From Macrostomum lignano (taxonomy: Eukaryota): DNA of 64,000 nucleotides. The DNA lies in NCBI GenBank assembly GCA_002269645.1, contig NIVC01003317.1, positions 40,331-104,330 of the forward strand, given 5' to 3'. The position numbers were made by a program, and so were the translations under genes. Below the pieces are notes generated by a model that was not told the origin of the DNA, did not search any database, and saw nothing but the letters and a program-made list of their open reading frames with translations. Positions 4,814-33,115 of this stretch are shown piece after piece (position 1 is the stretch's first letter; the number at the start of each line of letters is the position of its first letter).

Positions 4814-4824
4814 CTGGCGATGGT

Positions 4825-7335: not shown

Positions 7336-7428
7336 TTTGAGTTTGACAATGGCTACAAGAAACTGGAGAATGCAAAGGCCGTTCGACATAAAATATGCGG
7401 ACAATTAGTTAGGGAAGTTTTTTCTAAC

Positions 7429-9336
7429 CTGGCCGGCCGTGTCCCAAAGCTGTACGGCCACAACTCGACCGTCCACTACCAGCGTCCGAGTCTTGAAGTC
7501 TACGCCCAGCGTGGCCGTCGTGTTGGCAGAGAATCGACCATCGCAAAATCGTCCAATGAAGCTGCTCTTGCCCACTGCCGCGTCGCCTGCCAACACCACC
7601 TTGAACATGCGCTCGGGTGGCGACATGGCAACCGACTCAGCAATTGACTCTGCCTGATCCACTTCAGCGCCCTCCTCCTCTTCCTCCGGATATCCCATCT
7701 GATGAGGCTGAGGACACCGACGGAGCTGCCGATGCCTTCGACTGCTGCGCAACGGCTGGCGATGACGGATGACTTCTCCGTCCTCCTGCGCTTCGGAGTA
7801 CATGTAGCAATCGTCCAGCTGTTGAGCGGTCGCCGAGCTCCGCTCCCGAGCTCCACAATCGACCAGAGTCTCTCGGGTGGAGTGAAGACCTTCTTCATCC
7901 TCTTCTACTTCTTCGTCGGTAAAATCGTACCCAAAGCCTTTGCCGCCGCTGCCGCCAAAAGGGATTACAAAGTGATCCGGGAAGTCGGCGGCAGAAGCCA
8001 TGGACTGTCGCTGATCGTCGCGACAGGTCGACATTCCGCTGTCAACCTCCTCGTCATCCTCATCTAGCTCGGTGCTCAGACCCACTCTTCTCTCCACCCC
8101 GTCTTCGCAAAATTCCTCCGCGGCCGCGGCGGTGCCGACGCTGCTCACGGGGCGACAGAAGCTGCCTCGTCCGGACGACGGCGTGACAGCGCCACCTCCG
8201 CCACCACCGCTGCTGACGCCGCTGTATTGGCGCTCAAGAGCGCAGCGCAGACTGTCGTTGGTGTCGCTTAGACTCCGGTTGGCCTGCTGTAGCAGCCGCA
8301 GCTGTAGTGCCAGCTGCTCCTGATCGCGCTGGTAGGTCTGAAGATTTCTTCTCTCGACCAGCAGCTCCCGGGTCCGGCCTTCCTGGTCCTGGCGCATTCG
8401 AGCGAGCTCGCTGCGGCTTACCGCTAGCGCCGTCTCCAGCCTCTGCATGTCCGCTAAGAGACTCTGGTTTCGCTCCCTGGTTTCTTCGACGCTGCGTCGT
8501 AACCCGACCTCTGAAGTGGCATCCGCGACATCCTGTCGGCTTCGTCGACGCTGCAGTTCGTCGATCATCGTCTGCAGCTCGTCGATTTCGGCCTGCTTTC
8601 TGTCCAGCAGGTCCTGGTACTGCTCGGCCAGCCGGCGTCTTTCCTGCGCTCTCGCTCGCTGCTCCAACTTGGTCATCTGGATCTCCATCTCCTCCTCCAG
8701 TTGGCGCACGTGGCTCTCGTTGGCCGCCTTGGCTCTGGCAAAGGCCTCCTCGAGTTGTTGACGTTCGCGACGCTGAGCTCCGACCTCCTTGGCTGCACTG
8801 ACAATAATGGACTCGAAGCTGTCTACAAGCTGGGGGTATTGGCGCTGCAACAGGCAGTGCAGCTCGCAGACTTTCTCTTGACAGCTGAGCTGCTGAAGTC
8901 CCTCGGTCAGCTGCTGCTCGAGGTCTGCACCGCTGGCACCGCTACGCTGCTGCGGCGGCTGTCGCAGCTCTTGGGGCTCGTCAACGTCTAGTAGCCGCTC
9001 CTGGGAGAAGGCCTTCATGCTCAGAGAGCTGCCAGCCTGGCCAGCTGCCAACTGCTGGTGATGATGCTGATGCTGGTTGTGCAACTCGCGGGAGGCCAAT
9101 GACAGGCCGATGGCCCTGAAGCCCGCCTGAAAGTCGGCCGCGTCAACCCGGCCGTCGCCGTCTTCGTCCAGCTGGGCGAAGATCTGTCGAACCTCGTCTG
9201 GCCTAAGATCACCGTCGCAGCAGCGAGCGAGGTCCGACTCGGTGATGAAGCCGGATCCGTCAGTGTCCAGGAGGCTGAACAGAGACGCCGCTCGCTGTGA
9301 TTCGGCCAGACTTGAGCCGAATTGTTCCTGCGTCAT
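7429..9336 (-). CDS. RASEF: RASEF/Rab45-like, exon 1 (two EF-hands, coiled coil, Rab G1-G3)
   Basis: ATG at 9336. EF loops DTDGSGFITESDL and DEDGDGRVDAADF, a long E/Q/R coiled coil, P-loop GDAAVGKSS and WDTAGQ. Donor CAG|GTTAGA at 7429/7428. Exon is 1908 nt, phase 0, and joins exon 2 in frame to give about 777 aa. Confidence 0.93.
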
Positions 9337-13909: not shown

Positions 13910-14121
13910 ATGGCCACCGTGGAACTCCAGCCGGTGAAGAAGCCCGAGCCGTCCAACTCGACTCCAAGCCGGCCATCGACGCAGTCAGGCTACAGGTTCG
14001 GCCAGCTGTCCAAGAGTTCCTTCTTTGCCAGGCATAACCCGCACCCTCACAGGTGCGTTCACATCAAAGGACTGCTGGGCCTGCCCATTCCCGTGGTGGT
14101 CGATGACTGCGATGATAGCAG
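13910..14121 (+). CDS. TBATA: TBATA/SPATIAL-like protein, exon 1
   Basis: The motif FGQLSKSSFFARHNPHPHRCVHIKGLLGLPIPVV resembles the TBATA-family N-terminal block (from memory of the family). Donor AG|GTGAGG, phase 2. Confidence 0.75.
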
Positions 14122-14259: not shown

Positions 14260-15500
14260 TTACCTTTGGCGCCACATCTAGAAACCACAGCTTTTGTTCG
14301 CCACATCTAGAAACCACACCCTTTAGTACCACATCTAGAACCCACAGATATTTGGCGTCACATCTATAATCCACACCTTTTTAGCACCACATCTAGAAAC
14401 CCCACCCTTTAGTACCACATCTAGGACCCCTTTGGCGCCACATCTAGAACCCACACCCTTTAGTACCACATTTAGAACCCATACCCTTTAGTACCAAATC
14501 TAGAACCCATACCCTTTAGTACCACATTTAGAACCCATACCCTTTAGTACCACATCTAAGACCCATACCCTTTAGTACCACATCTAAGACCCACACCCTT
14601 TAGTGTCACATCTAGAACCCATAGCTTTTTGGCGCCACATCTAGAACCCACAGCTTTTTGGCACCACATCTAGAAACCACACACTTTAGTACGACATCTA
14701 GAACCCACACCCTTTTGGCGCCACATCTAGAAACCACACCCTTTAGTACCACATCTAGGACCCACACCCTTTAGTACCACATCTAGGACCCACACCCTTT
14801 AGTACCACATCTAGAACCCACAGCTTTTTGGCGCCGCATCTATAATCCACGCCCTTTTGGCGCCACATATAGAACCCACACCCTTCCCTTTTGGCGCCAC
14901 ATCTAAAACCCACACCCTTTTGGCGCCACATCTAGAAACCACACCCTTTTGGCGCCACATCTAGAAACCACACCCTTTAGTACCACATCTAGGACCCATA
15001 CCCTTTAGTACCACATCTAGAACCCACAGCTTTTTGATGCCACATCTAGAACCCACACCCTTTTGGCGCCACATCTAGAAACCACACCCTTTAGTACCAC
15101 ATCTATAATCCACACCCTTTTGGCGCCACATATAGAACCCACACCCTTCCATTTTGGCGCCACATCTAGAACCCACACCCTTTAGTACCACATCTAGAAC
15201 CCACACCCTTTAGTACCACATCTAGAACCCACACCCTTTAGTACCACATCTAGAACCCACACCCTTTAGTACCACATCTAGAACCCACACCCTTTAGTAC
15301 CACATCTAGAACCCACACCCTTTAGTACCACATCTAGAACCCACACCCTTTAGTACCACATCTAGAACCCACACCCTTTAGTACCACATCTAGAACCCAC
15401 ACCCTTTAGTACCACATCTATAATCCACACCCTTTTGGCGCCACATCTAGGACCTGCACTCTTTTGGCGCCACATCTAGAACCCACTCCCTTTTGGTGCC
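14260..15500. repeat. 28-bp minisatellite CCACATCTAGAACCCACACCCTTTAGTA (variant TTTTGGCG) filling TBATA intron 1
   Basis: Tandem copies are visible, and they are homogeneous from 15170 to 15420. Confidence 0.95.
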
Positions 15501-15563: not shown

Positions 15564-15883
15564 CTACGAAACACACCTGTGCTTCCCTCCGAACGGGCAC
15601 AATGACGAGAAGCTGGCCAGCCAGAGGCTTCTGCTGCCGGTCAACGCCATCCATCTCAACTCGCACAAGCACCCGCTGGACACGGTGAATGGACTGCAGT
15701 ATTTCACCAACTTGAGAAACTATTCATTCAAGGAGAAGGCCGTACCAAGACTCGGTCTAGTTCCGGTAACCGAGAGCTGGAGAGAGCAGCTGAGAAGCCT
15801 CACTGACCAGACATTCCATCCTGAGCAGCCAGTGGCTCCGGCTCCGGCTGCAGACGGACGCGGCGACATGAACCTGCGGCGTG
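15564..15883 (+). CDS. TBATA: TBATA-like, exon 2
   Basis: Acceptor ccaacgCAG|C is phase 2 and matches exon 1. Encodes ...PRLGLVPVTESWREQLRSL.... Donor G|GTGAGT, phase 1. Confidence 0.72.
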
Positions 15884-15974
15884 GTGAGTAACTGCATACA
15901 GTTAGTAGGTGGCCAACTTTCGAGGCATGCCTACTTCTATGAAAGCTTGATCATTTTTTATTTTTGGCGCTATT

Positions 15975-18440
15975 TTGGATGTCTGTGGTGCTACCATGTA
16001 CTTTGATGTCTGTGGCGCTACTTTGATGTCTGTGGCGCTACCATGTACTTTGATGTCTGTGGCGCTACTTTGATGTCTGTGGTGCTACTTTGATGTCTGT
16101 GGCGCTACTTTGATGTCTGTGGCGCTACTTTGGATGTCTGTGGCACTACTTTGGATGTCTGTGGCGCTACCATGTACTTTGATGTCTGTAGCGCTACCAT
16201 GTACTTTGATGTCTGTGGCGCTACCATGTACGTTGATGTCTGTGGCGTTACCATGTACTTTGACGTCTGGGGCGCTACCATGTACTTTGGATGTCTGTGG
16301 TGCTACCATGTACTTTGATGTCTGTGGCGCTACCATGTACTTTGATGTCTGTGGCGCTACCATGTACTTTGATGTCTGTGGCGCTACCATGTACTTTGGA
16401 TGTCTGTGGTGCTACCATGTACTTTGATGTCTGGGGCGCTACCATGTACTTTGATGTCTGGGGCGCTACCATGTACTTTGATATCTGTGGCGCTACCATG
16501 TACTTTGATGTCTGTGGCGCTACCATGTACGTTGATGTCTGTGGCGCTACTTTGGATGTCTGTGGCGCTACTTTGGATGTCTGTGGCGCTACCATGTACT
16601 TTGATGTCTGTGGCGCTACTTTGGATGTCTGTTGCGCTACCATGTACTTTGATGTCTGTGGTGCTACTTTGGATGTCTGTTGCGCTACCACGTACTTTGA
16701 TGTCTGTGGCGCTACTTTGGATGTCTGTTGCGCTACCATGTACTTTGATGTCAGTGGCGCTACCATGTACTTTGATGTCTGTGGCGCTACTTTGCATGTC
16801 TGTTGCGCTACCATGTACTTTGATGTCTGTGGCGCTACTTTGATGTCTGGGGCGCTACCATGTACTTTGATGTCTGTGGCGCTACTTTGCATGTCTGTTG
16901 CGCTACCATGTACTTTGATGTCTGTGTAGCTACATTGGATGTCTGTGGCGCTACTTTGATGTCTGTGGCGCTACCATGTACTTTGATGTCTGTGGCGTTA
17001 CCATGTACGTTGATGTCTGTGGCGCTACCATGTACGTTGATGTCTGTGGCGCTACCATGTACTTTGACGTCTGGGGCGCTACTTTGGATGTCTGTGGCGC
17101 TACTTTGATGTCTGTGGCGCTACCATGTACTTTGATGTCTGTGGCGCTACCATGTACTTTGATGTCTGGAGCGCTACCATGTACTTTGATGTCTGTGGCG
17201 CTACCATGTACGTTGATGTCTGTGGCGCTACCATGTACTTTGATGTCTGGAGCGCTACCATGTACTTTGATGTCTGTGGCGCTACTTTGATGTCTGTGGC
17301 GCTACCATGTACTTTGATGTCTGTGGCGCTACCATGTACTTTGATGTCTGGAGCGCTACCATGTACTTTGATGTCTGTGGCGCTACCATGTACGTTGATG
17401 TCTGTGGCGCTACCATGTACTTTGATGTCTGGAGCGCTACCATGTACTTTGATGTCTGTGGCGCTACCATGTACTTTGATGTCTGTGGCGCTACTTTGGA
17501 TGTCTGTTGCGCTACCATCTACTTTGATGTCTGTGGCGCTACCATGTACTTTGATGTCTGTGGCGCTACTTTGGATGTCTGTTGCGCTATCATGTACTTT
17601 GATGCCTGTGGCGCTACTTTGGATGTCTGTGGCGCTACCATGTACTTTGATGTCTGACGTGGCGCTACTTTGGATGTCTGTTGCGCTAAAATGTACTTTG
17701 ATGTCTGTGGCGCTACTTTGGATGTCTGTGGCGCTACCATGTACTTTGATGTTTGTGGCGCTACTTTGGATGTCTGTTGCGCTACCATGTACTTTGATGT
17801 CTGTGGCGCTACTTTGGATGTCTGTTGCGCTAACATGTACTTTGATGTCTGTGGCGCTACTTTGGATGTCTGTGGCGCTACCATGTACTTTGATGTCTGT
17901 TGCGCTATCATGTACTTTGATGTCTGTGGCGCTACTTTGATGTCTGTGGCGCTACCATGTACTTTGATGTCTGTGGCGCTACCATGTACTTTGATGTCTG
18001 TGGCGCTACTTTGGATGTCTGTGGCGCTACCATGTACTTTGATGTCTGTGGCGCTACTTTGGATGTCTGTTGCGCTACCATGTACTTTGATGTCTGTGGC
18101 GCTACTTTGGATGTCTGTGGCGCTACCATGTACTTTGATGTCTGTGGCGCTACAATTGTACTTTGATGTCTGTGGCGCTACGATGTACTTTGATGTCTGT
18201 GGCGCTACCATGTACTTTGATGTCTGTGGCGCTACCATGTACTTTGATGTCTGTGGCGCTACCATGTACTTTGATGTCTGTGGCGCTACTTTGACGTCTG
18301 GGGCGCTACTTTGGATGTCTGTGGCGCTACTTTGATGTCTGTGGCGCTACTTTGATGTCTCTTGCGCTACCATGTACTTTGATGTCTGTGGCGCTTTTTT
18401 GATGTCTGAGGCGCTACTTTGATGTCTGTGGCGCTACTTT
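15975..18440. repeat. 2.5-kb satellite of 27-bp (GATGTCTGTGGCGCTACCATGTACTTT) and 20/21-bp subunits in TBATA intron 2
   Basis: Visible tandem array. All ORFs at 16085-18335 are translations of it. Confidence 0.95.
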
Positions 18441-19328
18441 TTTAGCTTGCACAAAAGTACGACTTTTAAAAGTTCATGACGCACCGGCAGTTCATTGTCG
18501 ATACAAAAATATATGTACTTAGCAACATTGTAAATTCGCCATCACAGAAGATTCTGTCTGTGGTCGCCACTTTTGAGAGCGCAGGTAAAGTCTCATCTCA
18601 ATTTTTGCCAGTGACGCAACTCAGCTCCGCCGCGGCAGCCTTGAGTTGAGGAATGAACTGGGGGAGCGGTGTGCGAGGGTTGGAGGGATTAAAGCTACTC
18701 CGATCTATTTTCTCGTGTCTTTTAAATTTCAGAATAGTCCCAGAGAAATTGCTCACTGGGCGCATAGAGTGGCGACTTTTCAATGTTGCTGAGTATATAG
18801 GAGAATTACGAGCTATTAATATCAATTTCTTTTTTGGACACACGCCAGCATATTTAATGAACACCAATTGGAGAAATCAGAATCAGAGAGTAGAATAAGC
18901 GTTTATTTTTTTCTTTTTTTGTAGAAGTTTGCTCTTAAGTGTCAAAATGCATTTTAACCAAATATGTTTGTTTTAGCTTATCAACAAAAAGCGTATTTCT
19001 AACCTTCCAAATATTTTTACTAACATATCCAATAGAGTGCGTACGCTGTGAGTCATCTAAAATCAGCGTCTGTGGTTAAGTGGCGCGATCTGATTGGCTG
19101 AGAGCCGATACGCTGCCTGACAGTTTTTTCTACCCCCCCCCCCAGCCAAGGGTGGTGCGATGGGTTGACTTTGAACGCGGGAAGGGAACGGGGCTGCAGT
19201 GAGGGGGGTGGTCGGACTGCTCAGTCAGCCAATTGCAGCCACTGGCGTGACCCCCAACCCCTAAGCGTAGCACAGTGTGTGAAACGTAATCTTTAGCTAG
19301 TATAATTTATAAAGCCTAACTCTGATCC

Positions 19329-19335
19329 TATAAAA
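19329..19335 (+). promoter_or_regulatory. TATA box (TATAAAA) of the nested secreted-protein gene
   Basis: Canonical TATAAAA about 80 bp upstream of ATG 19414. Confidence 0.5.
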
Positions 19336-19413
19336 TGGTCTGAAGTCTAATGGTTTTCGGGACTGTTGCTCACGTCTACCATTTTGATCATTTTGAGCAG
19401 CACTTGGAACAAT

Positions 19414-20439
19414 ATGAGAACTAGCTTAAATTGGCTGGCTCTGCTAGCCTTTGCTTGCGGGCTAGGCCTGGTTGAGTCGCACGGAGATCATGGCATTGCC
19501 AGAGGCACCAACACCTACGATGGATATCAGCAACCTTACAGCTCGGGTGTGAGCTACGGTAAGGGCAAGGATGATCGCTATGCCAAGGGCTACGACAAGG
19601 ACGACGGCTATGAAAAGGCCTATGACCGGAGCTACGACAGGAACGATGGGTATGGCAAGAGCTACGGCAAGGACGATGGCTATGACAAGGGCTACGGCAA
19701 GCGTTATGGCAAGGACGATGACTACAAGGGCTACGGCAAGAGCTACGGCAAGAACGATGTCTATGACAAGGGCTACGGCAAGCGTTACAGCAAGGACGAT
19801 GACTACGACAAGGGCTACGGCAAGCGCTACGGCAAGGACGATGACTACGACAAGGGCTACGGCAAGAGCTACCGCGAGAGCTACGGCAAGAGCTACGGCA
19901 AGGACGATGACTATGACAAGGGCTACGGAAAGCGTTACAGCAAGGACGATGACTACGACAAGGGCTACGGCAAGCGCTACGGCAAGGACGATGACTACGA
20001 CAAGGGCTACGGCAAGAGCTACCGCGAGAGCTACGGCAAGAGCTACGGCAAGGACGATGGCTATGGCAAGGGCTACGGCAAGGACGATGGCTATGGCAAG
20101 GGCTATGAACCCAGCTACGCCAAGGGCTACGATAAGTTAAATTATTATGACGACGACTACGCTGACGACTACAGCGGCGAAGATTACCTGGACCTGCTCG
20201 ATCTTTTCGACGACTACGGATTCGACGACTACTACGACAGTTTCTATGGCGGCGACTACGACTACGACGAGGTGATCGAAGAAGAGCTCGACAAGTACGG
20301 CAAGCCTCGCGTGGTTAGTCACTACCTGGAGAGCCCGAAGGGCGGCAAGCGCAAGCTGTTGTACAAGGCGCCTAAGGACAAGTATGGCAACTATAAGTAC
20401 AGCGACAACGGCTACGGCAGTCGGAAGAAGCGCTATTGA
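19414..20439 (+). CDS. Intronless secreted Tyr/Gly/Lys/Asp-rich repeat protein (341 aa), nested in TBATA intron 2; candidate DOPA/tanning structural protein
   Basis: The first ATG in the open frame gives signal peptide-like MRTSLNWLALLAFACGLGLVES. It is followed by YGK/YDK/KDDDY repeats (about 64 Tyr, no Cys in the mature part), an acidic block and a basic C-terminus. Third-position variation between repeat units suggests real coding sequence. Function is inferred. Confidence 0.85.
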   Translation: MRTSLNWLALLAFACGLGLVESHGDHGIARGTNTYDGYQQPYSSGVSYGKGKDDRYAKGYDKDDGYEKAYDRSYDRNDGYGKSYGKDDGYDKGYGKRYGKDDDYKGYGKSYGKNDVYDKGYGKRYSKDDDYDKGYGKRYGKDDDYDKGYGKSYRESYGKSYGKDDDYDKGYGKRYSKDDDYDKGYGKRYGKDDDYDKGYGKSYRESYGKSYGKDDGYGKGYGKDDGYGKGYEPSYAKGYDKLNYYDDDYADDYSGEDYLDLLDLFDDYGFDDYYDSFYGGDYDYDEVIEEELDKYGKPRVVSHYLESPKGGKRKLLYKAPKDKYGNYKYSDNGYGSRKKRY

Positions 20440-20949
20440 GGAGTGACTGCAGAGAAATATTGTTTTCAAAATTATCACAATCGTTTACAATATATTTGTA
20501 TGCTTTGTTTGTTATCGTCTAAATATATTTTGTTCAATTACTAAAACGTGCGCTGTCTGACTTTTTACTGGCTTCTAAGCCAGCTTTGCAGTTGGTAGTC
20601 GATTTAGAATTTAGACGAAAAATTTCTAAACACTACTAAAGTAGCATCATTGGAAGGAGAGCAGTAACTTTAAGCATCATTTAATTTCAAACGCGTGTTA
20701 CTTCGTATGATGTTGATATAAATGTAAAATTCTTAAGATGTAGTCGATAGATCTTCCAACAGTTTGGCCAGTTCTGTCAATGGAGTTCTGCCAATGAAAC
20801 TCTACCAATAGAAGTCTCTCAAATGAAGTAACTAGCGGGTCGTACTATAAAGCTGTCGTAGCGTAAGTTGGATCGTACGCCAGAACTTTTACACTGCGGA
20901 GATGGGAGCTAAGAACGATCTTATCTTACGATGGCTTTATAGAACTGGC

Positions 20950-21135
20950 TCTAGGACTTTAACAATAGAATTCTACCAACCGGAGTCTACCATTCTCTAC
21001 CAATAGAACTCTACCAACGGGACTTTACCATTCTCTACCAATAGAACTCTACCAACCGGAGTCTACCATTCTCTACCAATAGAACTCTACCAAAGTAAAT
21101 CTACCAATATCTACCAATTGGACTCCACCAATGAA
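20950..21135. repeat. Short degenerate repeat CTACCA(ATAGAACT/TTCT)
   Basis: Repeated ctaccaatagaact units, including a duplicated block of about 45 bp. Confidence 0.6.
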
Positions 21136-21297
21136 ACTCTTAACAGCATCGGCAATGCAGATCCAACCAATGTGTAAATATTAGTTTAACCATTTACATT
21201 AATGTTATCGGTCAACTTTGCCTATCTACTCATTTCGCCAGGGCTAAAAACTCACTAAACCTTAATTCGTGCACCAAACAACTTCACCAATCCGCAG

Positions 21298-21650
21298 AGG
21301 CCACCTATCCTGACCCAGCCCGCCAGCAGCAGCCGGAGCAGTCACAGACGGCCAGGCCGATGTACAGTCGACAGACCGGGCGGCTGATTCCGCCACCGTC
21401 ACGCGCAATGTCGCGTCGTCCGCTGCGCTCATCCCGTCGTTCCACGCCGGCCCACGTGCTGTCCAACTACGAGCACATCAGCGCCGCACCGGACCTCGAG
21501 TCCGCGGTGTTCAGCATGCTCTGCCAGATTCTACAGACCGAGGATTTCAACGCCGTCCAGGCTTGGCTGGTGAGCGCCTCCGATCGAGAGAAGGCGCTCG
21601 TCATGGACGTTATCCGATCTGCTGTGGCTAACAAAGCTGCGTACTACGAG
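21298..21650 (+). CDS. TBATA: TBATA-like, exon 3 (conserved C-terminal block)
   Basis: Acceptor tccgCAG|AG, phase 1. Encodes YSRQTGRLIPPPSRA and MLCQILQTEDFNAVQAWLVSASDREKALV, typical of the TBATA/C4orf17 family. Donor GAG|GTGAGG, phase 0. Confidence 0.8.
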
Positions 21651-22169: not shown

Positions 22170-22544
22170 GCGGACCCCACTGGCGAGGTCTTCCAGCCCA
22201 CCAACATTCGCGAGGATTTGCACCTGCCACCAATTGCGGAGGATCCCGACCGACCGAAACGGGTCGACCGCCTCGTGATTGAGGACGCCGAGTCATCGGA
22301 GTCTCACCTGCACGGTCACCATCATGAGCAAGCCCAGTGTCAGCCTGAGGAGCAGCCGCAGGCCCCGGCTGAGAAGAAGCTTGAGGCGAAACCCGTGGCA
22401 GGAGCCAAGACGTCTCGGCAAGAGAAGGAGCCGAAGCAGAAGGAGCAACAGCAGCAACAACAGAAGCCAGCAAAGGCGGCTGCCGGAGCCAAAGGCGGCA
22501 AGAATTCGGACAAGAAGGCGAAAACTGGAGCTAAATTGAAGTAA
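22170..22544 (+). CDS. TBATA: TBATA-like, exon 4 (low-complexity E/Q/K tail)
   Basis: Branch-like TACTAAT at about 22112 and acceptor ccactCAG|GCG, phase 0. Open to TAA at 22544. The four exons total 1260 nt, about 419 aa. Confidence 0.65.
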   Translation, partial: ADPTGEVFQPTNIREDLHLPPIAEDPDRPKRVDRLVIEDAESSESHLHGHHHEQAQCQPEEQPQAPAEKKLEAKPVAGAKTSRQEKEPKQKEQQQQQQKPAKAAAGAKGGKNSDKKAKTGAKLK

Positions 22545-22599
22545 GAGCGATTGTTTTAAAACCAATGACTTTATCCATTGGATAAAAAATCGATAAAAT

Positions 22600-23241
22600 A
22601 GAAATACGGCAAACCCTCTGCAAGCTGACGTCAGGTGTGGCACCCTCAAGATCGATGCACTGCTGAGATGCAATCTAAGATCCCATTTTTTAACGCCAGC
22701 ACAAGATAGTAAAATATTTTGACGCGTGCCGATCGTTGAAATGAAAGTTAATAGACCGCCCATGTCGAGGCGGCGAGAGCGTGGCTGCTGGTCATTCAAA
22801 GTGGACTGGCCATCCTTGAACTGTTGGATTCATTTGTAAATAGCTTTTTTTCTTAATCCTTTTCTCACCATGGATTGAGAAAAGATGATTAGCAATTTTG
22901 GCTCCACTCCATCCTGCAGACCACAGGGCGAAAACTTGACTCCGCTGACTCTCAAGGATGTAGAGAGGAATCATCTTATAATCTTTAGCCGAAAGCAAGC
23001 ATTTAGTATGGACTAAGCAAGCGCTGACACCACTAGATCTGACCAGCAATTTTACTGGTTCTAATTCCAAAAATTGATGACGGAAAAATGACACCACAGA
23101 CATTCGAGATTGTCTAACACTGGTACAAGTTTTTTCGTTGCAAAATTATCTTTAGTTTGACACATAAAACATAAAAATTGGTCAAGGTACCGATCGGAGC
23201 TAGAGCAAACATTCCGGGAACTTTTGGGACACCCCTCGGTA
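22600..23241 (-). mobile_element. Truncated mariner (Tc1/mariner) relic: 5' TIR plus decayed transposase N-terminus
   Basis: Minus strand reads TA|CCGAGGGGTGTCCCAAAAGTTCCCGGAAT, a mariner-like TIR. Translation ...IANHLFSIHGEKRIKK[+1 shift in A7]AIYK*IQQFKDGQSTLNDQQPRS... resembles the mariner HTH, and a later RVPHLT resembles the WVPHEL motif. No second TIR was found. Confidence 0.7.
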
Positions 23242-23775: not shown

Positions 23776-25719
23776 TGTAAAGTCTATAAATTGCAAGTTT
23801 AAATCTCCGTTTTCCCCCTTTGCATGGCAAACGCAACAGTTTTCGATAGCTAAAAAAGCATATGGTAAGCTTTCCAAGTGGCATATACGTTTTTGAATCA
23901 AGGGAAATCGTTGGAGCAATTTTGATAGCAATTTTCGCATCGAAGCAAAAAAATTGAAGCGGGTGTCTTTTCCTCTGCAGCCGAAAATCTTCCAGCCCAC
24001 GTGGCTAATTAGAACAATCAGACCAACGTCTGAGCTGCCGGCACCTGGCGACATCGGCCTGCAGATCAAACAGGCAAAAAAGCTGCAAGCATAGATTTGT
24101 CCCCAATTGGACCTTATCAACTATAATTATACAAAATCTTAGCAGGTGTGGCAAGTGATTACTAATCTTGAAATATTGCATAGGTTGCTCCGTAGCAACA
24201 TTCTGCACCCAAGGCTCTGTCTGGATCAAAAAGAATCTTCCCCAATTAACCGCGGCGCTTTTTGAGCAGATAACAGAAATCCGTAACGAGCAGCTGCCCA
24301 CAATTTCAGGTACTCAAAGCGCGAACCGGCTCTGACCAAACCGGGTGGCAAGTCAAAGGAGGTCTGGCGGCCTCAGGACTCGTACGCCGCCTGATGCCCC
24401 CCAGCGCCTGCAGACGCGTTCAAGCGGAACAAATTTATAATCAGACAGAAATTAAAACAAAATTAAATCTATTTTTCTCTCTATGTTGAAAATACGTCTT
24501 TTAGAAAGCCTGTGCTCCGTTCTATACGATTTCAAGCCATGTTGTTTGCTTTTCAAAAGTCAGTTTTTCGTAGTGACCAAGATATAGAGAGGATTTTTGG
24601 CTGTGAGAATGAAACTTCTGTGTGTTCCCTACTCCCAGATTTTCCTGTTGGTAGCTAATCAAGGCAGGACATGATCAATGAAACTCTTACTAAAAGACTC
24701 GAATTATCAAGACACGATTGATTTTTTCTGATAGTTCTGACTCGGCCCTTCTTTGTAATAGATGAACGTTTCTACTATTTCATATCCCTTTTTCAGAGGT
24801 TTTTTGCATGAGAGTTTTACGAGTTCCAAACAGGCTGATTTTCCCATATCGTTTGTTTGCCTTAATTAGGATTTGCTTTTTTAATTTTCAAACAAAAAAT
24901 ACTTCTATGAAACGTGTGCACAGACAAGCGCTATAAGCAGGCAAATTATTGTTAATAATTCTTTTCACACAATAAACTGCAGTTTTTGCTTTTTCTATCT
25001 GAATTAACATATCCGTTTCCTTTTCTCGTCAACCTGAATAGTGACAAACTGTCAGAGATATTGTGAAAGATTTTTGAGATATTAAAGATTTAATAAGACG
25101 TCTTTATGGATAAAAGAATGGCAAAAAAGATGCGAGAGACCTTCGTGGTGACGGCCATCCAAGCTTCAGATTAGCAAATTAATTTGACATTGAAACACTG
25201 TCAGATTGGTTTGTATTGACTAACGACTGACTATCGCAGTCGATGTGAGGGACTGACACGCAAATCGGAGAAAAACCTGCTGCTGATGGGGCGGTGAGGC
25301 GGTGGGCATGGAGTGGGATGATCATAATCATAGGCCTCTCCTCAGCTCCTCATCCTTTCCATTCGCTTGCCGAGAACCTCAGCATCCAATCAGGACAGAT
25401 CAGTTCTGAGAGCTCACCCGGTGGCGTCTCAGACGACAATAAACTGTTGTTTCAAGGCGGCCTTAAGCCTATCGCTCCAGGCTAAGCCTCGCTACAACCA
25501 GCTGGTCGGTCAAGTACTCGCTTAGCAAACCGGTTTAATAAAATCCTTTCGAAAATTCAGCTCCATCGCCAATCAGCAGTCATTGCTCTGTCGGGTTGGG
25601 CGCAATTCAGTTGGCCGGCACAAGTGGAAGCTTATTCAGCACTGCACCAGCAGCAGCAGTACCTCGTTGCACCTGCCGATATCGCACCCGGATTCCGACT
25701 GACTCACCGACATCCAGCC

Positions 25720-25930
25720 ATGGTAAGCGGGGTGAGCACATCGAACGGACAGGAACTCGCGGTGGCCTCCGCCGCCACGGGAGGCGGCAAGTCGGGGGAA
25801 CGCATCAAGCTGTTCGTCGGCCAGATCCCCCGGTCCATGGAGGAGGACGATCTGCGACCGCTGTTTGAGGAGTTCGGCGCGATCCTGGAGCTGACCGTGC
25901 TCAAGGACAAGTTCACTGGCGTTCACAAAG
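25720..25930 (+). CDS. CELF3/4/5/6: CELF3-6 (bruno-3/unc-75-type) RNA-binding protein, exon 1 (RRM1 N-half)
   Basis: [42 protein letters not shown]. Donor G|GTGAGT, phase 1. The start is uncertain: 25720 is the first in-frame ATG, but the frame is open at least 200 nt upstream and there is an acceptor-like site at 25560. Confidence 0.9.
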
Positions 25931-26022
25931 GTGAGTTGTCGAAGTTCTTAATTCGAAATCGTAAACCAGTATCTATTTTTGTTTCTCTGTATCAGTGTTC
26001 TCATAAATGCATGCTAGACATA

Positions 26023-26215
26023 GGGCCGTATGCAGAAAGCTTAGTCCAGACTAGCTAGTCCGGACTTGGGTAGTTCAGTCTATAGTCTATGGTCTAGCTA
26101 GCCTAGTTGTGCTATAGTAGACTGGTCTAACTCTGTGTTTCTGCATACCAAATCCAAGTCTAGACTAGCTTTTCAAGACCGGACTACCCTAGACAGAGCT
26201 TTCTGCATACGGCCC
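26023..26215. mobile_element. 193-bp MITE, PIF/Harbinger (Tourist)-like
   Basis: Perfect 19-bp TIRs GGGCCGTATGCAGAAAGCT / AGCTTTCTGCATACGGCCC, flanked on both sides by ATA (3-bp TSD). Confidence 0.8.
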
Positions 26216-27804: not shown

Positions 27805-28150
27805 ATGGGGAGGAGAGGAGGGGAGAGGAGAGAGAGAAAAGGAGAGAAGAGAGGGGAGAAGAGAGGGGAGGGGAGAGGAGAGGAGAAAGGACAGGAGAAA
27901 AAAGAGGAGAGAGGAGAGAGTTGAAAAGAGAGGGGAGAGAGGGGAGAAGAGAGAGGAGGAGAGAGGGGAGGAGAAAGGAGAGGAGAGAGGAGAGAGTTGA
28001 TAAGAGAGTTGAGAAGAGAGGGGAGAGAGGGGAGCAGAGAGGAAAGGAGAGAGGAGAGTGGAGAGGAGAGAGGAGAGGAGAAATTGAGAGTAGGGAGGAG
28101 AGAAGAGGGGAGGGGAGGGGAGAGAGTTGAGAAGAGAGGGGAGAAAAGGT
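27805..28150. repeat. GA-rich polypurine tract (left breakpoint region of the tandem duplication)
   Basis: Almost pure G/A sequence. Confidence 0.85.
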
Positions 28151-29213
28151 GGAGAAAATAGCTGAAATAGGGCTGAAATTATAAGCACGAAGCAGAACCC
28201 AAGAAAAAAGAAAACAAACTCACATAGCAACAAAACATTCATCAGAAGCCTTTGGCAGAGCAGCTCTGGCGGTAAACGCGCCTGACTCTCGCTCCACACG
28301 ACCCCTGATCCCGTGAGAGGCCAGATTAAGTTGAGGCTTGTGTGCACGGAAATCGGTCAGAGGTTTTTCTTGTGATTCACAGCCGTGAGGATCAGCAGAA
28401 TGAGCGTTGGTTGTTGGATGATTTCGCCGGAGATGTTGCGCCATGGTTCCAACTGTCCTCCTGCAATTAATATGATTATTACTACTATTATTATTATTAT
28501 TGACCCTTTGAACCAGAAAGACAAAGGAGATTAAAACGACAGGCAGATTGAAAAATGAAGACTGCAGCAGCCGCGACGCGAGCTTTTCAGTAGGAAATTA
28601 AAATTGATGCGCCTTGGGAGGCTGCAAGGGGGGGGGGCAGGGCTGAGCAGAAAGCAGAATGCTGCTCAGCTTTCACCTGCCTGCAGATCGGGTCTCAATC
28701 AGTTCCCCCGGAACCGGCCCCGACCGAGTCAGGCAGGCGAGTCAGCCGTCAGAACCTGAAATTCAGCGCAATGAGCCTCGCCTGATGATGTATTTCTGTC
28801 TTCTCCGATGCTCGTTTTAGGCACCTGACGCTGCGCACTGGATAAAGTGGGCTGACGGCTTTTTTAAGGCAGAGGGGATCCTGGCTGGCTTGGGTTTCAA
28901 AAGGATTCAAACAAATTCTGCTTCTCGTTTCAGCTTTGCCAAGCAGAAATTGCCATCCGAGTCACCTTGGGGGAGCCTGCTTTAATCTCATTGTAAAATT
29001 AATACCTCTGCCGTGTCTAGCAATGGCTTCCTGGTTTTACTGAGTCCTGCTTGCGGCCTTCATTGTCTCTGCTTGCATCTCGGATTCCTTCCGGTGTTCT
29101 ATTCTGTCCTGTCTTCCCCAGATTCTCTTCCTTCATCTCAGATTCTCTCTTCCTTCATCCTAGATATCTCTAATTCTCGGTCCTGTACGAGTATATTACA
29201 CCTACAGTCCTGA

Positions 29214-29454
<241 letters not shown>

Positions 29455-29717
29455 CAGACGTACATTCGTGGGTGACCCTGTATTAGTTGAATGCATACCC
29501 AAACCTACAGGTGCGTACGCATCTTACCAGCCTCATTTTTTGACCTAATAATTTCTTATAAAAGGAGACCCAGTAAAAAAACAGGAAATGAGCTTTTCTA
29601 TAAAAATTAAAGCCACTGGCTGCTACAAAAGCAGCTAGAGAGAGCACTGAAATCTGGCAAACCAACTTCTTTACTTATTAATCAACGAAAAAGATAAGGA
29701 GATATTACCAGTCTAAA

Positions 29718-31112
29718 ATCTGGGATCTAGGATCTGGGATCTAGGATCTGGGATCTAGGATCTGGGATCTAGGATCTGGGATCTAGGATCTGGGATCTAG
29801 GATCTGGGATCTAGGATCTGGGATCTAGGATCTGGGATCTAGGATCTGGGATCTAGGATCTGGGATCTAGGATCTGGGATCTAGGATCTGGGATCTAGGA
29901 TCTGGGATCTAGGATCTGGGATCTAGGATCTGGGATCTAGGATCTGGGATCTAGGATCTGGGATCTAGGATCTGGGATCTAGGATCTGGGATCTAGGATC
30001 TGGGATCTAGGATCTGGGATCTAGGATCTGGGATCTAGGATCTGGGATCTAGGATCTGGGATCTAGGATCTGGGATCTAGGATCTGGGATCTAGGATCTG
30101 GGATCTAGGATCTGGGATCTAGGATCTGGGATCTAGGATCTGGGATCTAGGATCTGGGATCTAGGATCTGGGATCTAGGATCTGGGATCTAGGATCTGGG
30201 ATCTAGGATCTGGGATCTAGGATCTGGGATCTAGGATCTGGGATCTAGGATCTGGGATCTAGGATCTGGGATCTAGGATCTGGGATCTAGGATCTGGGAT
30301 CTAGGATCTGGGATCTAGGATCTGGGATCTAGGATCTGGGATCTAGGATCTGGGATCTAGGATCTGGGATCTAGGATCTGGGATCTAGGATCTGGGATCT
30401 AGGATCTGGGATCTAGGATCTGGGATCTAGGATCTGGGATCTAGGATCTGGGATCTAGGATCTGGGATCTAGGATCTGGGATCTAGGATCTGGGATCTAG
30501 GATCTGGGATCTAGGATCTGGGATCTAGGATCTGGGATCTAGGATCTGGGATCTAGGATCTGGGATCTAGGATCTGGGATCTAGGATCTGGGATCTAGGA
30601 TCTGGGATCTAGGATCTGGGATCTAGGATCTGGGATCTAGGATCTGGGATCTAGGATCTGGGATCTAGGATCTGGGATCTAGGATCTGGGATCTAGGATC
30701 TGGGATCTAGGATCTGGGATCTAGGATCTGGGATCTAGGATCTGGGATCTAGGATCTGGGATCTAGGATCTGGGATCTAGGATCTGGGATCTAGGATCTG
30801 GGATCTAGGATCTGGGATCTAGGATCTGGGATCTAGGATCTGGGATCTAGGATCTGGGATCTAGGATCTGGGATCTAGGATCTGGGATCTAGGATCTGGG
30901 ATCTAGGATCTGGGATCTAGGATCTGGGATCTAGGATCTGGGATCTAGGATCTGGGATCTAGGATCTGGGATCTAGGATCTGGGATCTAGGATCTGGGAT
31001 CTAGGATCTGGGATCTAGGATCTGGGATCTAGGATCTGGGATCTAGGATCTGGGATCTAGGATCTGGGATCTAGGATCTGGGATCTAGGATCTGGGATCT
31101 GGGATCTAGGAT
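29718..31112. repeat. (GGATCTAGGATCTG)n array, about 100 perfect 14-bp units, copy A
   Basis: Directly visible, with one irregularity at the 3' end. Confidence 0.97.
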
Positions 31113-32830
31113 TCACCTAATTGCTTTGTTGCTGCAAGCAAAAAATTAAATGGAACAAGGCCGTTATGCTTAATCTGCTATGTCTTGTATCGTGGTCATG
31201 ACACGCAGTTACAATTCATTAATTTAAGCTTTCATCAAATTCCCTGCTCTGGGCGTGGCAGTTTTCCTAATCGAGAAAAGTGAAAAAATTCAATTTAATC
31301 TACCATCACAGATACTGAAACAGGGCTCCCAGCTAGAATTCTCGCAATTCAATCTTGAGTAATAATAAATTTTTTGTTCCATCTGACAATGTAAGCATCT
31401 GACAATGTAAGAATGATTGCTGCGCGTTTTAGCGTGATTAAAGAAAATTTGTTAATTAAAATAATTAGCTGGGGTTTTCTTAGAATGTCAAAGATGCTTT
31501 TTTCTTATGAAATTAATTTAGTGAATTGGCAAAATATTGGTGAATGCGATGAGGACATGGTCGATATTACTAGAGTTGAAGAGGAGGTAAAAAAGAGGCT
31601 GCGAGTGGGTAGAGAGGAAGAGTTGGAGCGAGGCGAGAGGAAGGAGAGAGAGGGGGAGAGGGGAGAGGGGAGAGGGGAGAGGAGAGAGGAGAGGAGAAAT
31701 TGAGAGTAGGGAGGAGAGAAGAGGGGAGGGGAGGGGAGAGAGTTGAGAAGAGAGGGGAGAAAAGGTGGAGAAAATAGCTGAAATAGGGCTGAAATTATAA
31801 GCACGAAGCAGAACCCAAGAAAAAAGAAAACAAACTCACATAGCAACAAAACATTCATCAGAAGCCTTTGGCAGAGCAGCTCTGGCGGTAAACGCGCCTG
31901 ACTCTCGCTCCACACGACCCCTGATCCCGTGAGAGGCCAGATTAAGTTGAGGCTTGTGTGCACGGAAATCGGTCAGAGGTTTTTCTTGTGATTCACAGCC
32001 GTGAGGATCAGCAGAATGAGCGTTGGTTGTTGGATGATTTCGCCGGAGATGTTGCGCCATGGTTCCAACTGTCCTCCTGCAATTAATATGATTATTACTA
32101 CTATTATTATTATTATTGACCCTTTGAACCAGAAAGACAAAGGAGATTAAAACGACAGGCAGATTGAAAAATGAAGACTGCAGCAGCCGCGACGCGAGCT
32201 TTTCAGTAGGAAATTAAAATTGATGCGCCTTGGGAGGCTGCAAGGGGGGGGGGCAGGGCTGAGCAGAAAGCAGAATGCTGCTCAGCTTTCACCTGCCTGC
32301 AGATCGGGTCTCAATCAGTTCCCCCGGAACCGTCCCCGACCGAGTCAGGCAGGCGAGTCAGCCGTCAGAAGCTGAAATTCAGCGCAATGAGCCTCGCCTG
32401 ATGATGTATTTCTGTCTTCTCCGATGCTCGTTTTAGGCACCTGACGCTGCGCACTGGATAAAGTGGGCTGACGGCTTTTTTAAGGCAGAGGGGATCCTGG
32501 CTGGCTTGGGTTTCAAAAGGATTCAAACAAATTCTGCTTCTCGTTTCAGCTTTGCCAAGCAGAAATTGCCATCCGAGTCACCTTGGGGGAGCCTGCTTTA
32601 ATCTCATTGTAAAATTAATACCTCTGCCGTGTCTAGCAATGGCTTCCTGGTTTTACTGAGTCCTGCTTGCGGCCTTCATTGTCTCTGCTTGCATCTCGGA
32701 TTCCTTCCGGTGTTCTATTCTGGCCTGTCTTCTCCCAGATTCTCTTCCTTCATCTCAGATTCTCTCTTCCTTCATCCTAGATATCTCTAATTCTCGGTCC
32801 TGTACGAGTATATTACACCTTCAGTCCTGA

Positions 32831-33115
<285 letters not shown>

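What the first reader, a model, noticed from the sequence alone, without database searches (positions are those of the whole stretch)
19329..20439. Nested, same-strand, intronless gene for a secreted Tyr/Lys/Asp/Gly polyampholyte: candidate DOPA eggshell, adhesive or cement protein
Seen: its own TATA box, a signal peptide, and about 64 Tyr in about 319 mature residues (about 20%) with no Cys. The modules are xYGK, YDKG and KDDDY, with a 150-bp (50-aa) internal duplication (19861 vs 20011). These are followed by a strongly acidic Y/D/E block and a basic C-terminal block. It lies inside intron 2 of an unrelated gene on the same strand. Known: trematode vitelline/eggshell precursors and mussel adhesive proteins use Tyr-to-DOPA next to Lys for quinone tanning, and (S/D)YGK-like motifs occur in Fasciola vitelline protein B. 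Inference: a possibly undescribed sclerotising or self-coacervating biomaterial protein. Same-strand nesting implies transcriptional interference or mutually exclusive expression with the host gene.
Basis: partly seen in the sequence, partly recalled or inferred. Interest (0 to 1): 0.8.

Follow-up and report, generated by a model that had tools for sequence, protein, structure and literature searches.

The report
Secreted tyrosine-rich flatworm protein, nested gene
An unannotated, intron-free gene sits inside an intron of the TBATA gene of the flatworm Macrostomum lignano and encodes a secreted, disordered protein that is one-fifth tyrosine; it is most likely a building block that is chemically cross-linked into the eggshell, but neither its expression nor its function has been shown.

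Summary
An intact 341-codon ORF lies at 19414-20439 (+). It has TATAAA boxes at 19308 and 19329 and a classic 22-residue signal peptide. The mature protein has 319 residues (64 Tyr, 62 Asp, 55 Gly, 49 Lys, no Cys). It contains xYGK/YDKG/KDDDY modules, a 150-bp tandem period, an acidic Tyr/Asp/Glu block and a basic tail ending in RKKRY.

The window is Macrostomum lignano, a free-living flatworm. The host gene is TBATA, and the ORF lies in its intron 2 on the same strand.

Codon bias in the non-repetitive parts supports real coding sequence. So do repeat periods that are all multiples of 3, and an open frame that runs beyond the repeats.

No homologue was found in Pfam (including the trematode eggshell TES domain), in 5.8 billion proteins, in 1.84 billion representative proteins, or in metagenome contigs.

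By composition it resembles the Cys-free, Tyr-rich, Tyr-Gly and Lys-bearing eggshell precursors of parasitic flatworms. It belongs to none of their families.

Best reading (about 0.5): a precursor that is cross-linked through its tyrosines into the eggshell. No expression or chemical evidence was obtainable here. Interest is moderate.

The parts
19093..19097 (+). ATTGG (inverted CCAAT), a possible proximal promoter element
   Evidence: Sequence only; function not tested.
19229..19233 (+). CCAAT box, 100 nt upstream of the TATA box
   Evidence: Sequence only; function not tested.
19308..19313 (+). First TATAAA
19329..19334 (+). Second TATAAA, 85 nt upstream of the ATG; the transcription start is inferred near 19360
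   Evidence: the start site is an inference.
19380..19400 (+). Pyrimidine-rich tract ending in AG (cattttgatcattttgagcag|CAC), 13 nt before the ATG. It could be a spliced-leader trans-splice acceptor or a cis 3' splice site.
   Evidence: 38.8% of M. lignano genes are trans-spliced (PMC5730564). Use of this site is not shown.
19414..20439 (+). Complete intronless coding sequence, 341 codons plus stop
   Evidence: Codon-position GC is .53/.34/.78, with AAG:AAA 49:0 and GGC 49 of 57 Gly codons.
19414..19479 (+). Signal peptide (aa 1-22), predicted cut VES|HG
   Evidence: heuristic only, no SignalP available.
19480..19569 (+). Non-repetitive N-terminal segment (aa 23-52), HGDHGIARGTNTYDGYQQPYSSGVSYGKGK
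19570..20130 (+). Repeat domain (aa 53-239): 41 Tyr, 45 K+R, 44 D+E, 38 Gly. Units are xYGK, YDKG and (G/S)KDD(D/G)Y. Charges are finely mixed.
   Evidence: sequence charge decoration -0.61; 99.4% of shuffles are blockier.
19730..20082 (+). 150-bp (50-aa) tandem duplication, 2.4 copies, 97% matches, inside the repeat domain
20131..20289 (+). Acidic Tyr/Asp/Glu block (aa 240-292, pI 4.05). Ten Tyr lie in an acidic, base-free context, which resembles tyrosine sulfation sites.
20290..20436 (+). Basic C-terminal block (aa 293-341, pI 10.0) ending in SRKKRY. A predicted beta-hairpin at aa 284-306 spans the junction between the acidic and basic blocks.
   Evidence: the last 102 aa are strongly charge-segregated, z = -10.3.
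13910..14121 (+). Host gene TBATA, coding exon 1
   Evidence: 100% identical to P0001 residues 1-70.
15564..15883 (+). Host gene TBATA, coding exon 2. Intron 2 (15884-21297) holds the nested gene.
21298..21650 (+). Host gene TBATA, coding exon 3 (SPATIAL profile positions 114-201)
22170..22540 (+). Host gene TBATA, coding exon 4. A fifth exon lies near 24305-24385.

Best explanation
This is a real, independently expressed, intronless gene of Macrostomum lignano. Its product enters the secretory pathway and is almost wholly disordered.

The 187-residue repeat domain presents a Tyr every 4 or 6 residues. Most of these have Gly after them and a Lys within two residues. Asp balances Lys, so the chain stays soluble.

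The last 102 residues separate into an acidic Tyr/Asp/Glu block and a basic tail. These blocks could let the molecules condense on one another in secretory granules.

After release, a phenol oxidase (tyrosinase) or a peroxidase would convert Tyr to DOPA/quinone or to tyrosyl radicals. Those would cross-link to Lys or to other Tyr and harden the material.

The most likely material is the eggshell, whose granules M. lignano makes in its own oocytes and shell glands.

Shown here: the ORF, its composition and architecture, the signal-peptide-like N-terminus, promoter-like elements, the codon bias, the nesting, the species, and the lack of homologues.

Inferred: transcription, secretion, tissue of expression, condensation, and all the cross-linking chemistry.
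For: Coding evidence:
- The frame stays open 150 nt upstream and 340 nt downstream of the repeats. The other two frames of the C-terminal part are closed.
- In the non-repetitive C-terminal part, GC at codon positions 1/2/3 is .54/.26/.78 and AAG:AAA is 13:0. Neighbouring genes have GC3 of .67-.74.
- All repeat periods are multiples of 3 (12, 18, 30, 42, 108, 150). Most minisatellites elsewhere in the window are not (23, 25, 28, 20, 14, 22).

Secretion and promoter:
- The N-terminus looks like a signal peptide.
- TATAAA and CCAAT elements lie upstream.

Species: the TBATA exons match M. lignano UniProt A0A1I8H186 apart from one residue.

Composition matches what the literature gives for flatworm eggshell precursors:
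- Those are Cys-free and 12-15% Tyr (PMC11727788).
- Their Tyr is flanked by Gly on the carboxyl side, and quinones bind Lys (PMC2758302).
- Here 27 of 64 Tyr are followed by Gly and 47 of 64 have a Lys within two residues.

Biology of the worm:
- M. lignano oocytes make eggshell granules on massive rough ER (PMC3158854, PMC4490696).
- Shell and cement glands surround the antrum (PMC4490696, PMC7336406).
- Capsule tanning in a planarian needs tyrosinase (PMC5544531).

Structure and charge:
- AlphaFold2 gives pLDDT below 50 for residues 23-280.
- Charge is well mixed in the repeat domain and strongly segregated in the tail.
Against: - No transcript, protein or in situ data could be reached.
- The exact protein is not on record, and the public M. 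lignano proteome holds nothing like it.
- There is no AATAAA or ATTAAA within 960 nt after the stop. The TBATA 3' end in this window also lacks one in the sequence read.
- The repeats are young. Copy-to-copy differences are 2 synonymous and 6 non-synonymous, so they give no sign of purifying selection.
- There is no homology to any known eggshell family.
- 18% Asp and the acidic block are not features the literature read here gives for trematode eggshell precursors.
- Other secretory tissues of this worm also make orphan secreted proteins: prostate, cement glands, rhabdite glands and the stylet.
Confidence: 0.5

Rival explanations
1. It is a secreted structural or adhesive protein of another tissue. 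Candidates are the cement that glues the egg to the substrate (cement glands), rhabdite or mucus material, or the matrix of the hardened male stylet. The Tyr/Lys chemistry would be the same as in the best explanation.
For: The composition evidence is the same as for the eggshell reading. Cement glands that stick the eggs to the substrate exist around the antrum (PMC7336406, PMC4490696). Tyr next to Lys is also the hallmark of DOPA-based permanent adhesives (PMC9229212, introduction).
Against: The duo-gland temporary adhesive of macrostomids is described as two large proteins, and no L-DOPA has been found in temporary adhesives (PMC9229212). The one published shell/cement-gland marker whose sequence could be read, RNA815_13, is a different 16-kb transcript. 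Nothing in the sequence distinguishes one gland from another.
Confidence: 0.2
2. It is a seminal-fluid protein from the prostate glands. That class in M. lignano is rich in secreted, fast-evolving proteins without homologues. The acidic Tyr cluster would be sulfated and act on the mating partner.
For: It has a signal peptide and no homologue anywhere. Ten Tyr lie in an acidic, base-free context. Reproduction-related genes evolve rapidly in this genus (PMC7336406).
Against: A regular 20% Tyr with Gly and Lys neighbours across 187 residues looks like a material, not a ligand. No sequence of this gene occurs in the held supplements of the prostate screen, which is a weak test because those files are short.
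Confidence: 0.1
3. It is not an independent gene. The ORF would be an alternative 3'-terminal exon of TBATA, or an mRNA cut out of the TBATA pre-mRNA by spliced-leader trans-splicing at 19400|19401.
For: A good acceptor lies 13 nt before the ATG. Splicing TBATA exon 1 (phase 2) to 19401 would be in frame, giving ...DDCDDSSTWNNMRTSL.... [quoted passage not shown]
Against: Splicing from exon 2 gives a stop after 5 codons. An in-frame match for exon 1 has a 1-in-3 chance. A fusion would bury a perfect signal peptide behind 70 cytosolic residues. TATAAA and CCAAT lie at the expected distances for an own promoter. The public TBATA model skips the ORF. Trans-splicing of the gene's own short primary transcript would still make it an independent gene.
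Confidence: 0.06
4. It is a precursor of small amidated peptides. Cleavage at the Gly-Lys-Arg sites would release Tyr-amide peptides such as YSKDDDYDKGY-NH2 (two copies).
For: There are six GKR sites, five of them in the repeat domain, and a C-terminal RKKR. A signal peptide is present.
Against: Only 5 of about 40 repeat units carry KR. The same position is occupied by KS, KG or KD in the others. The predicted peptides differ greatly in length (11 to more than 30 residues). The 100-residue acidic and basic tail has no counterpart in peptide precursors. The strong codon bias and high Tyr content suggest a bulk material.
Confidence: 0.04
5. It is not a functional gene: an expanded minisatellite that happens to be open, in a genome full of minisatellites.
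For: The window is packed with tandem arrays that give long ORFs in several frames. The repeat region is also open in a second frame for 189 codons. There are no homologues. Repeat copies show no excess of synonymous change.
Against: The frame continues through 50 non-repetitive codons upstream and 112 downstream, with gene-like GC3 and AAG:AAA 13:0 there. It starts with a signal peptide directly after the ATG. All repeat periods are multiples of 3.
Confidence: 0.06

Closest known systems
Trematode eggshell precursor families P14, P19 (vitelline protein B, TES domain) and P48
   Same: All are from the same phylum. They are secreted, Cys-free and Tyr-rich, with Tyr often followed by Gly and Lys available as a cross-link partner. 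They are packed in granules and hardened by tyrosinase-dependent quinone tanning (PMC2758302, PMC11727788).
   Different: No sequence relationship was found: there is no TES or any other Pfam match at E<=10 and no hit to any named eggshell protein. This protein has more Tyr (20% against 12-15%), 18% Asp, a strict 4/6-residue Tyr spacing, and an acidic block plus a basic tail. The trematode proteins are made by vitelline cells. M. lignano has none and makes its shell granules in the oocyte.
Planarian capsule-tanning system (tyrosinase, tanning factor-1, surfactant b, C-type lectin; Schmidtea mediterranea)
   Same: It is a free-living flatworm eggshell hardened by oxidation of Tyr-rich or DOPA-rich proteins (PMC5544531). 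It is the likely enzymatic context for a protein like this one.
   Different: Those genes are enzymes or accessory factors expressed in yolk glands. No Tyr/Lys/Asp repeat substrate is described there.
Shematrins and Lys-rich matrix proteins (KRMPs) of pearl oysters
   Same: They are secreted, low-complexity Gly/Tyr-rich framework proteins with a basic C-terminal signature ending in Tyr (RKKKY, RRKKY, RRRKY; PMC3896809). This protein ends in RKKRY.
   Different: They come from molluscan shell matrix. They are Gly-dominated (GnY repeats) and are not Asp/Lys polyampholytes. RKKRY is not one of the listed signatures. No homology was detected, so the resemblance is best read as convergence.
DOPA adhesives of mussels and the sandcastle worm
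   Same: Tyr (converted to DOPA) lies next to Lys in disordered, secreted, repeat proteins. Oppositely charged components condense before curing (own knowledge; PMC9229212 for DOPA in mussel and Phragmatopoma glues).
   Different: The phyla and repeat motifs differ. Those proteins are strongly basic or are phosphoserine polyanions carried on separate molecules. This protein carries both charges in one chain and is near neutral overall (net charge per residue -0.025).

Membership tests
Trematode eggshell synthesis (TES) / vitelline protein B family (Pfam PF08034, IPR012615) | Match to the TES domain profile | tested here: not met
   hmmscan against all of Pfam-A at E<=10 returned 0 families.
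Trematode eggshell synthesis (TES) / vitelline protein B family (Pfam PF08034, IPR012615) | Cys-free, Tyr-rich (12-15%) secreted protein | tested here: met
   The mature protein has 0 Cys and 20% Tyr and a signal-peptide-like N-terminus. The criterion comes from PMC11727788.
Trematode eggshell synthesis (TES) / vitelline protein B family (Pfam PF08034, IPR012615) | Tyr converted to DOPA; protein found in eggshell | not testable with these tools
   This needs amino-acid analysis or mass spectrometry of eggshells.
Schistosome P14 / P48 eggshell protein families | Detectable sequence similarity to P14 or P48 | tested here: not met
   The word-indexed search of 5.8 billion proteins, which includes NCBI and UniProt flatworm proteomes, gave no hit at E<=0.001 and only one unrelated metagenomic hit at E<=10. 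Exhaustive phmmer against 1.84 billion representatives gave 14 hits. The ten whose sequences were read were unrelated periodic repeats; the other four were not inspected.
Schistosome P14 / P48 eggshell protein families | Tyr frequently flanked by Gly on the carboxyl side; Lys present for cross-linking | tested here: met
   27 of 64 Tyr are followed by Gly, and 47 of 64 have a Lys within two residues. The criterion comes from PMC2758302.
Schistosome P14 / P48 eggshell protein families | Expression restricted to the cells that make the eggshell | not testable with these tools
   No M. lignano expression data could be queried by sequence.
Shematrin family (pearl oyster shell framework proteins) | Gly/Tyr-rich repeats with a C-terminal RKKKY / RRKKY / RRRKY-type signature | tested here: inconclusive
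   The C-terminus is SRKKRY, which has the same basic-then-Tyr pattern but is not a listed motif (PMC3896809). The repeats are Tyr/Lys/Asp/Gly, not GnY. No homology was found.
Neuropeptide / amidated peptide precursors | Signal peptide followed by repeated near-identical peptides, each bounded by dibasic (G)KR sites | tested here: inconclusive
   Six GKR sites are present, but only two of the predicted peptides are identical. Most repeat units lack a dibasic site.
Nested (intronic) gene, same strand as the host | The whole transcription unit lies inside one intron of another gene | tested here: met
   The promoter elements and coding sequence (19229-20439) lie inside TBATA intron 2 (15884-21297), as defined by the public protein model and the Pfam SPATIAL profile. 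The 3' end of the transcript is not mapped.
Nested (intronic) gene, same strand as the host | An independent transcript with its own start and poly(A) site | not testable with these tools
   Only sequence motifs were seen: TATAAA, CCAAT and a possible trans-splice acceptor. No canonical poly(A) signal is present.

The most novel reading that the evidence does not exclude
This would be the first molecularly identified eggshell (or egg-cement) precursor of an archoophoran flatworm, made by the oocyte itself. It would found a new protein family unrelated to the P14, P19 and P48 families of parasitic flatworms. It would work as a single-chain block polyampholyte. A charge-mixed Tyr/Lys/Asp repeat keeps it soluble. 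Its acidic and basic C-terminal blocks drive self-condensation in granules. Tyr-Lys cross-linking then hardens it. If true, Tyr-rich shell proteins were recruited more than once within the phylum, and the protein offers a compact new design for tyrosinase-curable materials.
Probability: 0.3. Interest if true: 0.6.

Novelty: new variant of a known kind. Interest (0 to 1): 0.4.

Why it matters
[quoted passage not shown] Macrostomum belongs to an early-branching group that has no vitelline cells; its oocytes make the shell granules.

A shell precursor from this animal would show whether the Tyr/Lys tanning chemistry predates the split, and whether the proteins themselves are shared or were reinvented. 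The lack of any homologue points to reinvention.

M. lignano supports RNAi, in situ hybridisation and transgenesis, so the prediction is cheap to test.

The case also shows that a well-formed gene can be missing from a public proteome. The likely reasons are its low complexity and its position inside another gene's intron.

The sequence (YGK / YDKG / KDDDY plus an acidic and a basic block) is a simple template for enzyme-curable or coacervating polymers.

Tried and rejected
Searches for relatives that found nothing:
- Pfam-A on the protein at E<=10: nothing.
- Word-indexed homology search at E<=0.001 and again at E<=10: nothing, then one E=1.5 metagenomic protein with KNDGKGYGK repeats and no signal peptide, judged compositional.
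- Exhaustive phmmer against 1.84 billion representatives: 14 hits. The ten sequences that were read were periodic low-complexity proteins (for example FTDYDTSFGNVQRK repeats in a 7009-aa protein) and were rejected as relatives; the other four hits were not read.
- Exact look-ups of the protein and of the M. lignano TBATA protein in the contig index, aimed at orthologous loci: not on record.
- Metagenome scan: 108 pattern matches, none confirmed.
- Rfam on the window: nothing.
- tblastn and blastn of the gene against the window: no second copy. Weak hits at 34-35 kb are a GAGAGGG satellite.

Attempts to reach expression data:
- I tested whether the published shell/cement-gland marker RNA815_13 is this gene. 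It is not; it is a different 16-kb transcript.
- Unique 20-22-mers of the gene were searched in the supplements of the prostate in situ screen: none found.
- The Lengerer et al. 2018 tail-organ screen is not held.

Structure and selection:
- AlphaFold2 on the full protein and on the last 67 residues gave disorder plus one hairpin. That is too little for a fold search, so none was run.
- Synonymous against non-synonymous differences between repeat copies are uninformative (2 against 6).

Rejected ideas:
- The bacterial promoter/terminator scanner was not used because it does not apply to a eukaryote.
- From the sequence alone I first considered a mollusc, lamprey or shrimp origin. The TBATA match rejected all three.
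Full report
WHAT IS THERE

The + strand carries an uninterrupted ORF from ATG 19414 to a stop at 20437-20439, 341 codons. The product starts with MRTSLNWLALLAFACGLGLVES|HGD. This has a basic n-region, a 16-residue hydrophobic core and V-x-S before the predicted cut. It is the only hydrophobic segment of the protein.

The mature 319 residues contain 64 Tyr (20%), 62 Asp, 55 Gly and 49 Lys. They contain no Cys; the one Cys lies in the signal peptide.

The protein has four parts:
- A short non-repetitive head (aa 23-52).
- A 187-residue repeat domain (aa 53-239) with 41 Tyr, 45 basic and 44 acidic residues.
- An acidic block (aa 240-292) with 22 D+E, 1 basic residue and 11 Tyr.
- A basic tail (aa 293-341) with 15 K+R, ending in SRKKRY.

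Tyr residues in the repeat domain are spaced 4 or 6 apart with almost no variation. The sd is 0.95 and the maximum 6, and none of 1000 shuffles was as regular.

Tandem Repeats Finder reports periods of 12, 18, 30, 42, 108 and 150 bp. The 150-bp unit is present in 2.4 copies at 97% identity (19730-20082), with 130 bp exactly identical between 19780-19909 and 19930-20059.

IS IT A GENE RATHER THAN AN OPEN MINISATELLITE?

The question matters, because the window is crowded with minisatellites that produce long ORFs in several frames. Four points favour a gene.

1. The frame stays open through 50 non-repetitive codons before the repeats and 112 after them. The other two frames of the C-terminal part are closed.
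2. The non-repetitive C-terminal part has GC of .54/.26/.78 at codon positions 1/2/3 and uses AAG 13 times and AAA never. Neighbouring genes have GC3 of .67-.74. Over the whole ORF, AAG:AAA is 49:0 and GGC makes up 49 of 57 Gly codons. That pattern is typical of heavily expressed genes, which is an inference.
3. All repeat periods are multiples of three, unlike most arrays elsewhere in the window (23, 25, 28, 20, 14, 22 bp).
4. The ATG is followed directly by a signal peptide. It is preceded by TATAAA at 19329 (85 nt upstream) and 19308, and by CCAAT at 19229.

Against a gene:
- There is no AATAAA or ATTAAA within 960 nt after the stop. The 3' end of TBATA in this window also shows none in the sequence read.
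- Differences between repeat copies (2 synonymous, 6 non-synonymous) give no evidence of purifying selection, because the copies are too young.

WHOSE GENOME, AND WHAT SURROUNDS THE GENE

A spliced model of the flanking exons covers the whole Pfam SPATIAL/TBATA profile (positions 1-201, E = 1e-41). Its best database match is the TBATA protein of Macrostomum lignano (UniProt A0A1I8H186). That protein is identical to the window's exons except for one residue; my first exon boundaries explain the 88% figure. The next best hits are mollusc TBATA proteins at about 43%. The window is therefore M. lignano, a free-living, early-branching flatworm.

The public TBATA model uses exons 13910-14121, 15564-15883, 21298-21650 and 22170-22540, plus one near 24305. 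The Tyr-rich gene lies wholly in intron 2 (15884-21297) on the same strand. It sits downstream of a 2.3-kb minisatellite with 27/48-bp units.

A pyrimidine-rich tract ending in AG lies 13 nt before the ATG (19380-19400).
- Splicing TBATA exon 2 to it gives a stop after five codons.
- Splicing exon 1 to it would be in frame. That has a one-in-three chance and would bury the signal peptide.
- Because 38.8% of M. lignano genes receive a spliced leader (PMC5730564), the site is more plausibly a trans-splice acceptor for the gene's own short primary transcript.

None of this is shown by data.

RELATIVES

None were found.
- Pfam-A gave no family at E<=10, which includes the trematode eggshell TES domain.
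- The word-indexed search of 5.8 billion proteins gave nothing at E<=0.001. At E<=10 it gave one unrelated metagenomic repeat protein.
- An exhaustive phmmer scan of 1.84 billion cluster representatives gave 14 hits. I read ten of them, and all ten were unrelated periodic repeat proteins; the other four were not read.
- A metagenome scan confirmed nothing.
- The window holds no second copy.

The reach of this negative result is limited. For TBATA, the only Macrostomum sequence in the collections was the single UniProt entry. Other Macrostomum species and M. lignano transcriptomes are therefore evidently not covered, and conservation within the genus is unknown. What the result does show is that the public M. 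lignano proteome lacks this gene. It also shows that no annotated protein of schistosomes, liver flukes, tapeworms, planarians or any other animal is detectably related.

WHAT IT MOST LIKELY DOES

AlphaFold2 without an alignment predicts disorder for residues 23-280 (pLDDT below 50). It predicts one beta-hairpin at 284-306 at moderate confidence.

The chemistry offered by the sequence is dense, regularly spaced Tyr. 27 of 64 Tyr have Gly after them, and 47 of 64 have a Lys within two residues.

The literature describes flatworm eggshell precursors in just these terms.
- Trematode vitelline proteins lack Cys and contain 12-15% Tyr (PMC11727788).
- In the P14, P19 and P48 families, Tyr is often followed by Gly and is oxidised to DOPA-quinone, which binds Lys of neighbouring chains (PMC2758302).
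- In a planarian, capsule tanning needs tyrosinase (PMC5544531).

M. lignano has no vitellaria. Its vitellogenic oocytes build eggshell granules on massive rough ER (PMC3158854, PMC4490696), and shell and cement glands surround the female antrum (PMC4490696, PMC7336406).

I therefore propose a five-step mechanism:
- The protein enters the secretory pathway.
- It is stored in granules.
- It is released around the egg.
- Its Tyr residues are oxidised by a phenol oxidase or peroxidase.
- It is cross-linked through Tyr-Lys or Tyr-Tyr bonds into the shell.

The charge pattern adds a second idea. Charges in the repeat domain are mixed more finely than in 99.4% of shuffles, which should keep the chain expanded and soluble. 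The last 102 residues are segregated into a -21 block and a +11 block (z = -10.3 against shuffles). Such blocks could drive head-to-tail condensation in the granule.

Every step after "has a signal peptide" is inference. I put about 0.5 on an eggshell precursor.

RIVALS

- About 0.2 goes to the same kind of material in another tissue (egg cement, rhabdites, stylet).
- The temporary adhesive itself is unlikely. In macrostomids it is described as two large proteins, and no L-DOPA is known from temporary adhesives (PMC9229212).
- A prostate seminal-fluid protein (0.1) fits the orphan status and the ten Tyr in acidic, sulfation-like context. It does not fit the material-like regularity.
- A peptide precursor (0.04) is suggested by six GKR sites. 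Most units lack them, however, and the predicted peptides are heterogeneous.
- An alternative TBATA exon (0.06) and a non-functional open minisatellite (0.06) are discussed above.

COMPARISON WITH WHAT IS KNOWN

The protein works like the trematode eggshell precursors but is not a member of their families. The defining sequence features were tested and not met, while the compositional features were met.

It also resembles pearl-oyster shematrins. These are Gly/Tyr-rich framework proteins with a basic C-terminal signature ending in Tyr, namely RKKKY, RRKKY or RRRKY (PMC3896809). Here the end is RKKRY. The repeats, the phylum and the context all differ, so this is best read as convergence.

Compared with mussel and sandcastle-worm DOPA adhesives, it shares the Tyr-Lys pairing. 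It differs in carrying both charges in one near-neutral chain (net charge per residue -0.025).

VERDICT

The kind of protein and the nesting are right, and the flatworm origin makes the eggshell reading the best one. Homology to known eggshell or adhesive proteins is absent, and no functional evidence exists.

It is a new, lineage-restricted variant of a known kind of protein, and it is missing from the public proteome. Interest is moderate at 0.4. It would rise if in situ hybridisation and RNAi in this tractable animal place it in the eggshell.

Noticed in passing
window 14272-15493 and 15978-18289: Two large minisatellites fill TBATA introns 1 and 2: 28-bp units x43, and 27/48-bp units x92 (2.3 kb). 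The second lies about 1 kb upstream of the nested gene's promoter. Both give long spurious ORFs on both strands.
   Followed up: partly
window 27984-31200 and 31611-33979: A tandem segmental duplication of about 3.6 kb (97.7-99.7% identity). Each copy carries a (TGTC)n microsatellite and a 14-bp satellite (ATCTGGGATCTAGG, up to 100 copies). It lies inside an intron of the CELF-like gene.
   Followed up: partly
window 4388-9336, minus strand: A gene for an EF-hand + coiled-coil + Rab GTPase protein (CRACR2A/Rab44-like by domain order). Most of it is one 643-codon exon. A 25-bp x51 minisatellite (6059-7343) lies between its Ras-domain exons.
   Followed up: partly
window 25624-57490, plus strand: A CELF/Bruno-like RNA-binding protein gene (RRM exons at 25624-26058 and 57035-57490). 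It spans more than 30 kb of satellite-filled introns.
   Followed up: no
window 22356 region (TBATA exon 4): The window encodes ...EEQPQAPAEKK..., where the UniProt M. lignano TBATA has ...EEQPQALAEKK... The window therefore comes from another allele, homeologous copy or assembly version of this hidden-polyploid genome.
   Followed up: no
window 20263-20331 (aa 284-306): AlphaFold2 without an alignment predicts a beta-hairpin (EVIEEEL / PRVVSHYLE) with pLDDT about 80, exactly at the junction of the acidic and basic blocks. It is the only ordered element predicted in the protein.
   Followed up: partly
window 20440-21400 and 22545-22700: Neither the nested gene nor TBATA has a canonical AATAAA or ATTAAA after its stop codon. 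M. lignano may use variant poly(A) signals.
   Followed up: no
P0135 (ENA metagenome protein, 308 aa): An unrelated environmental protein carries (KNDGKGYGK)n repeats very like the YGK units here (E = 1.5), but it has no signal peptide. The same short motif seems to arise independently.
   Followed up: no
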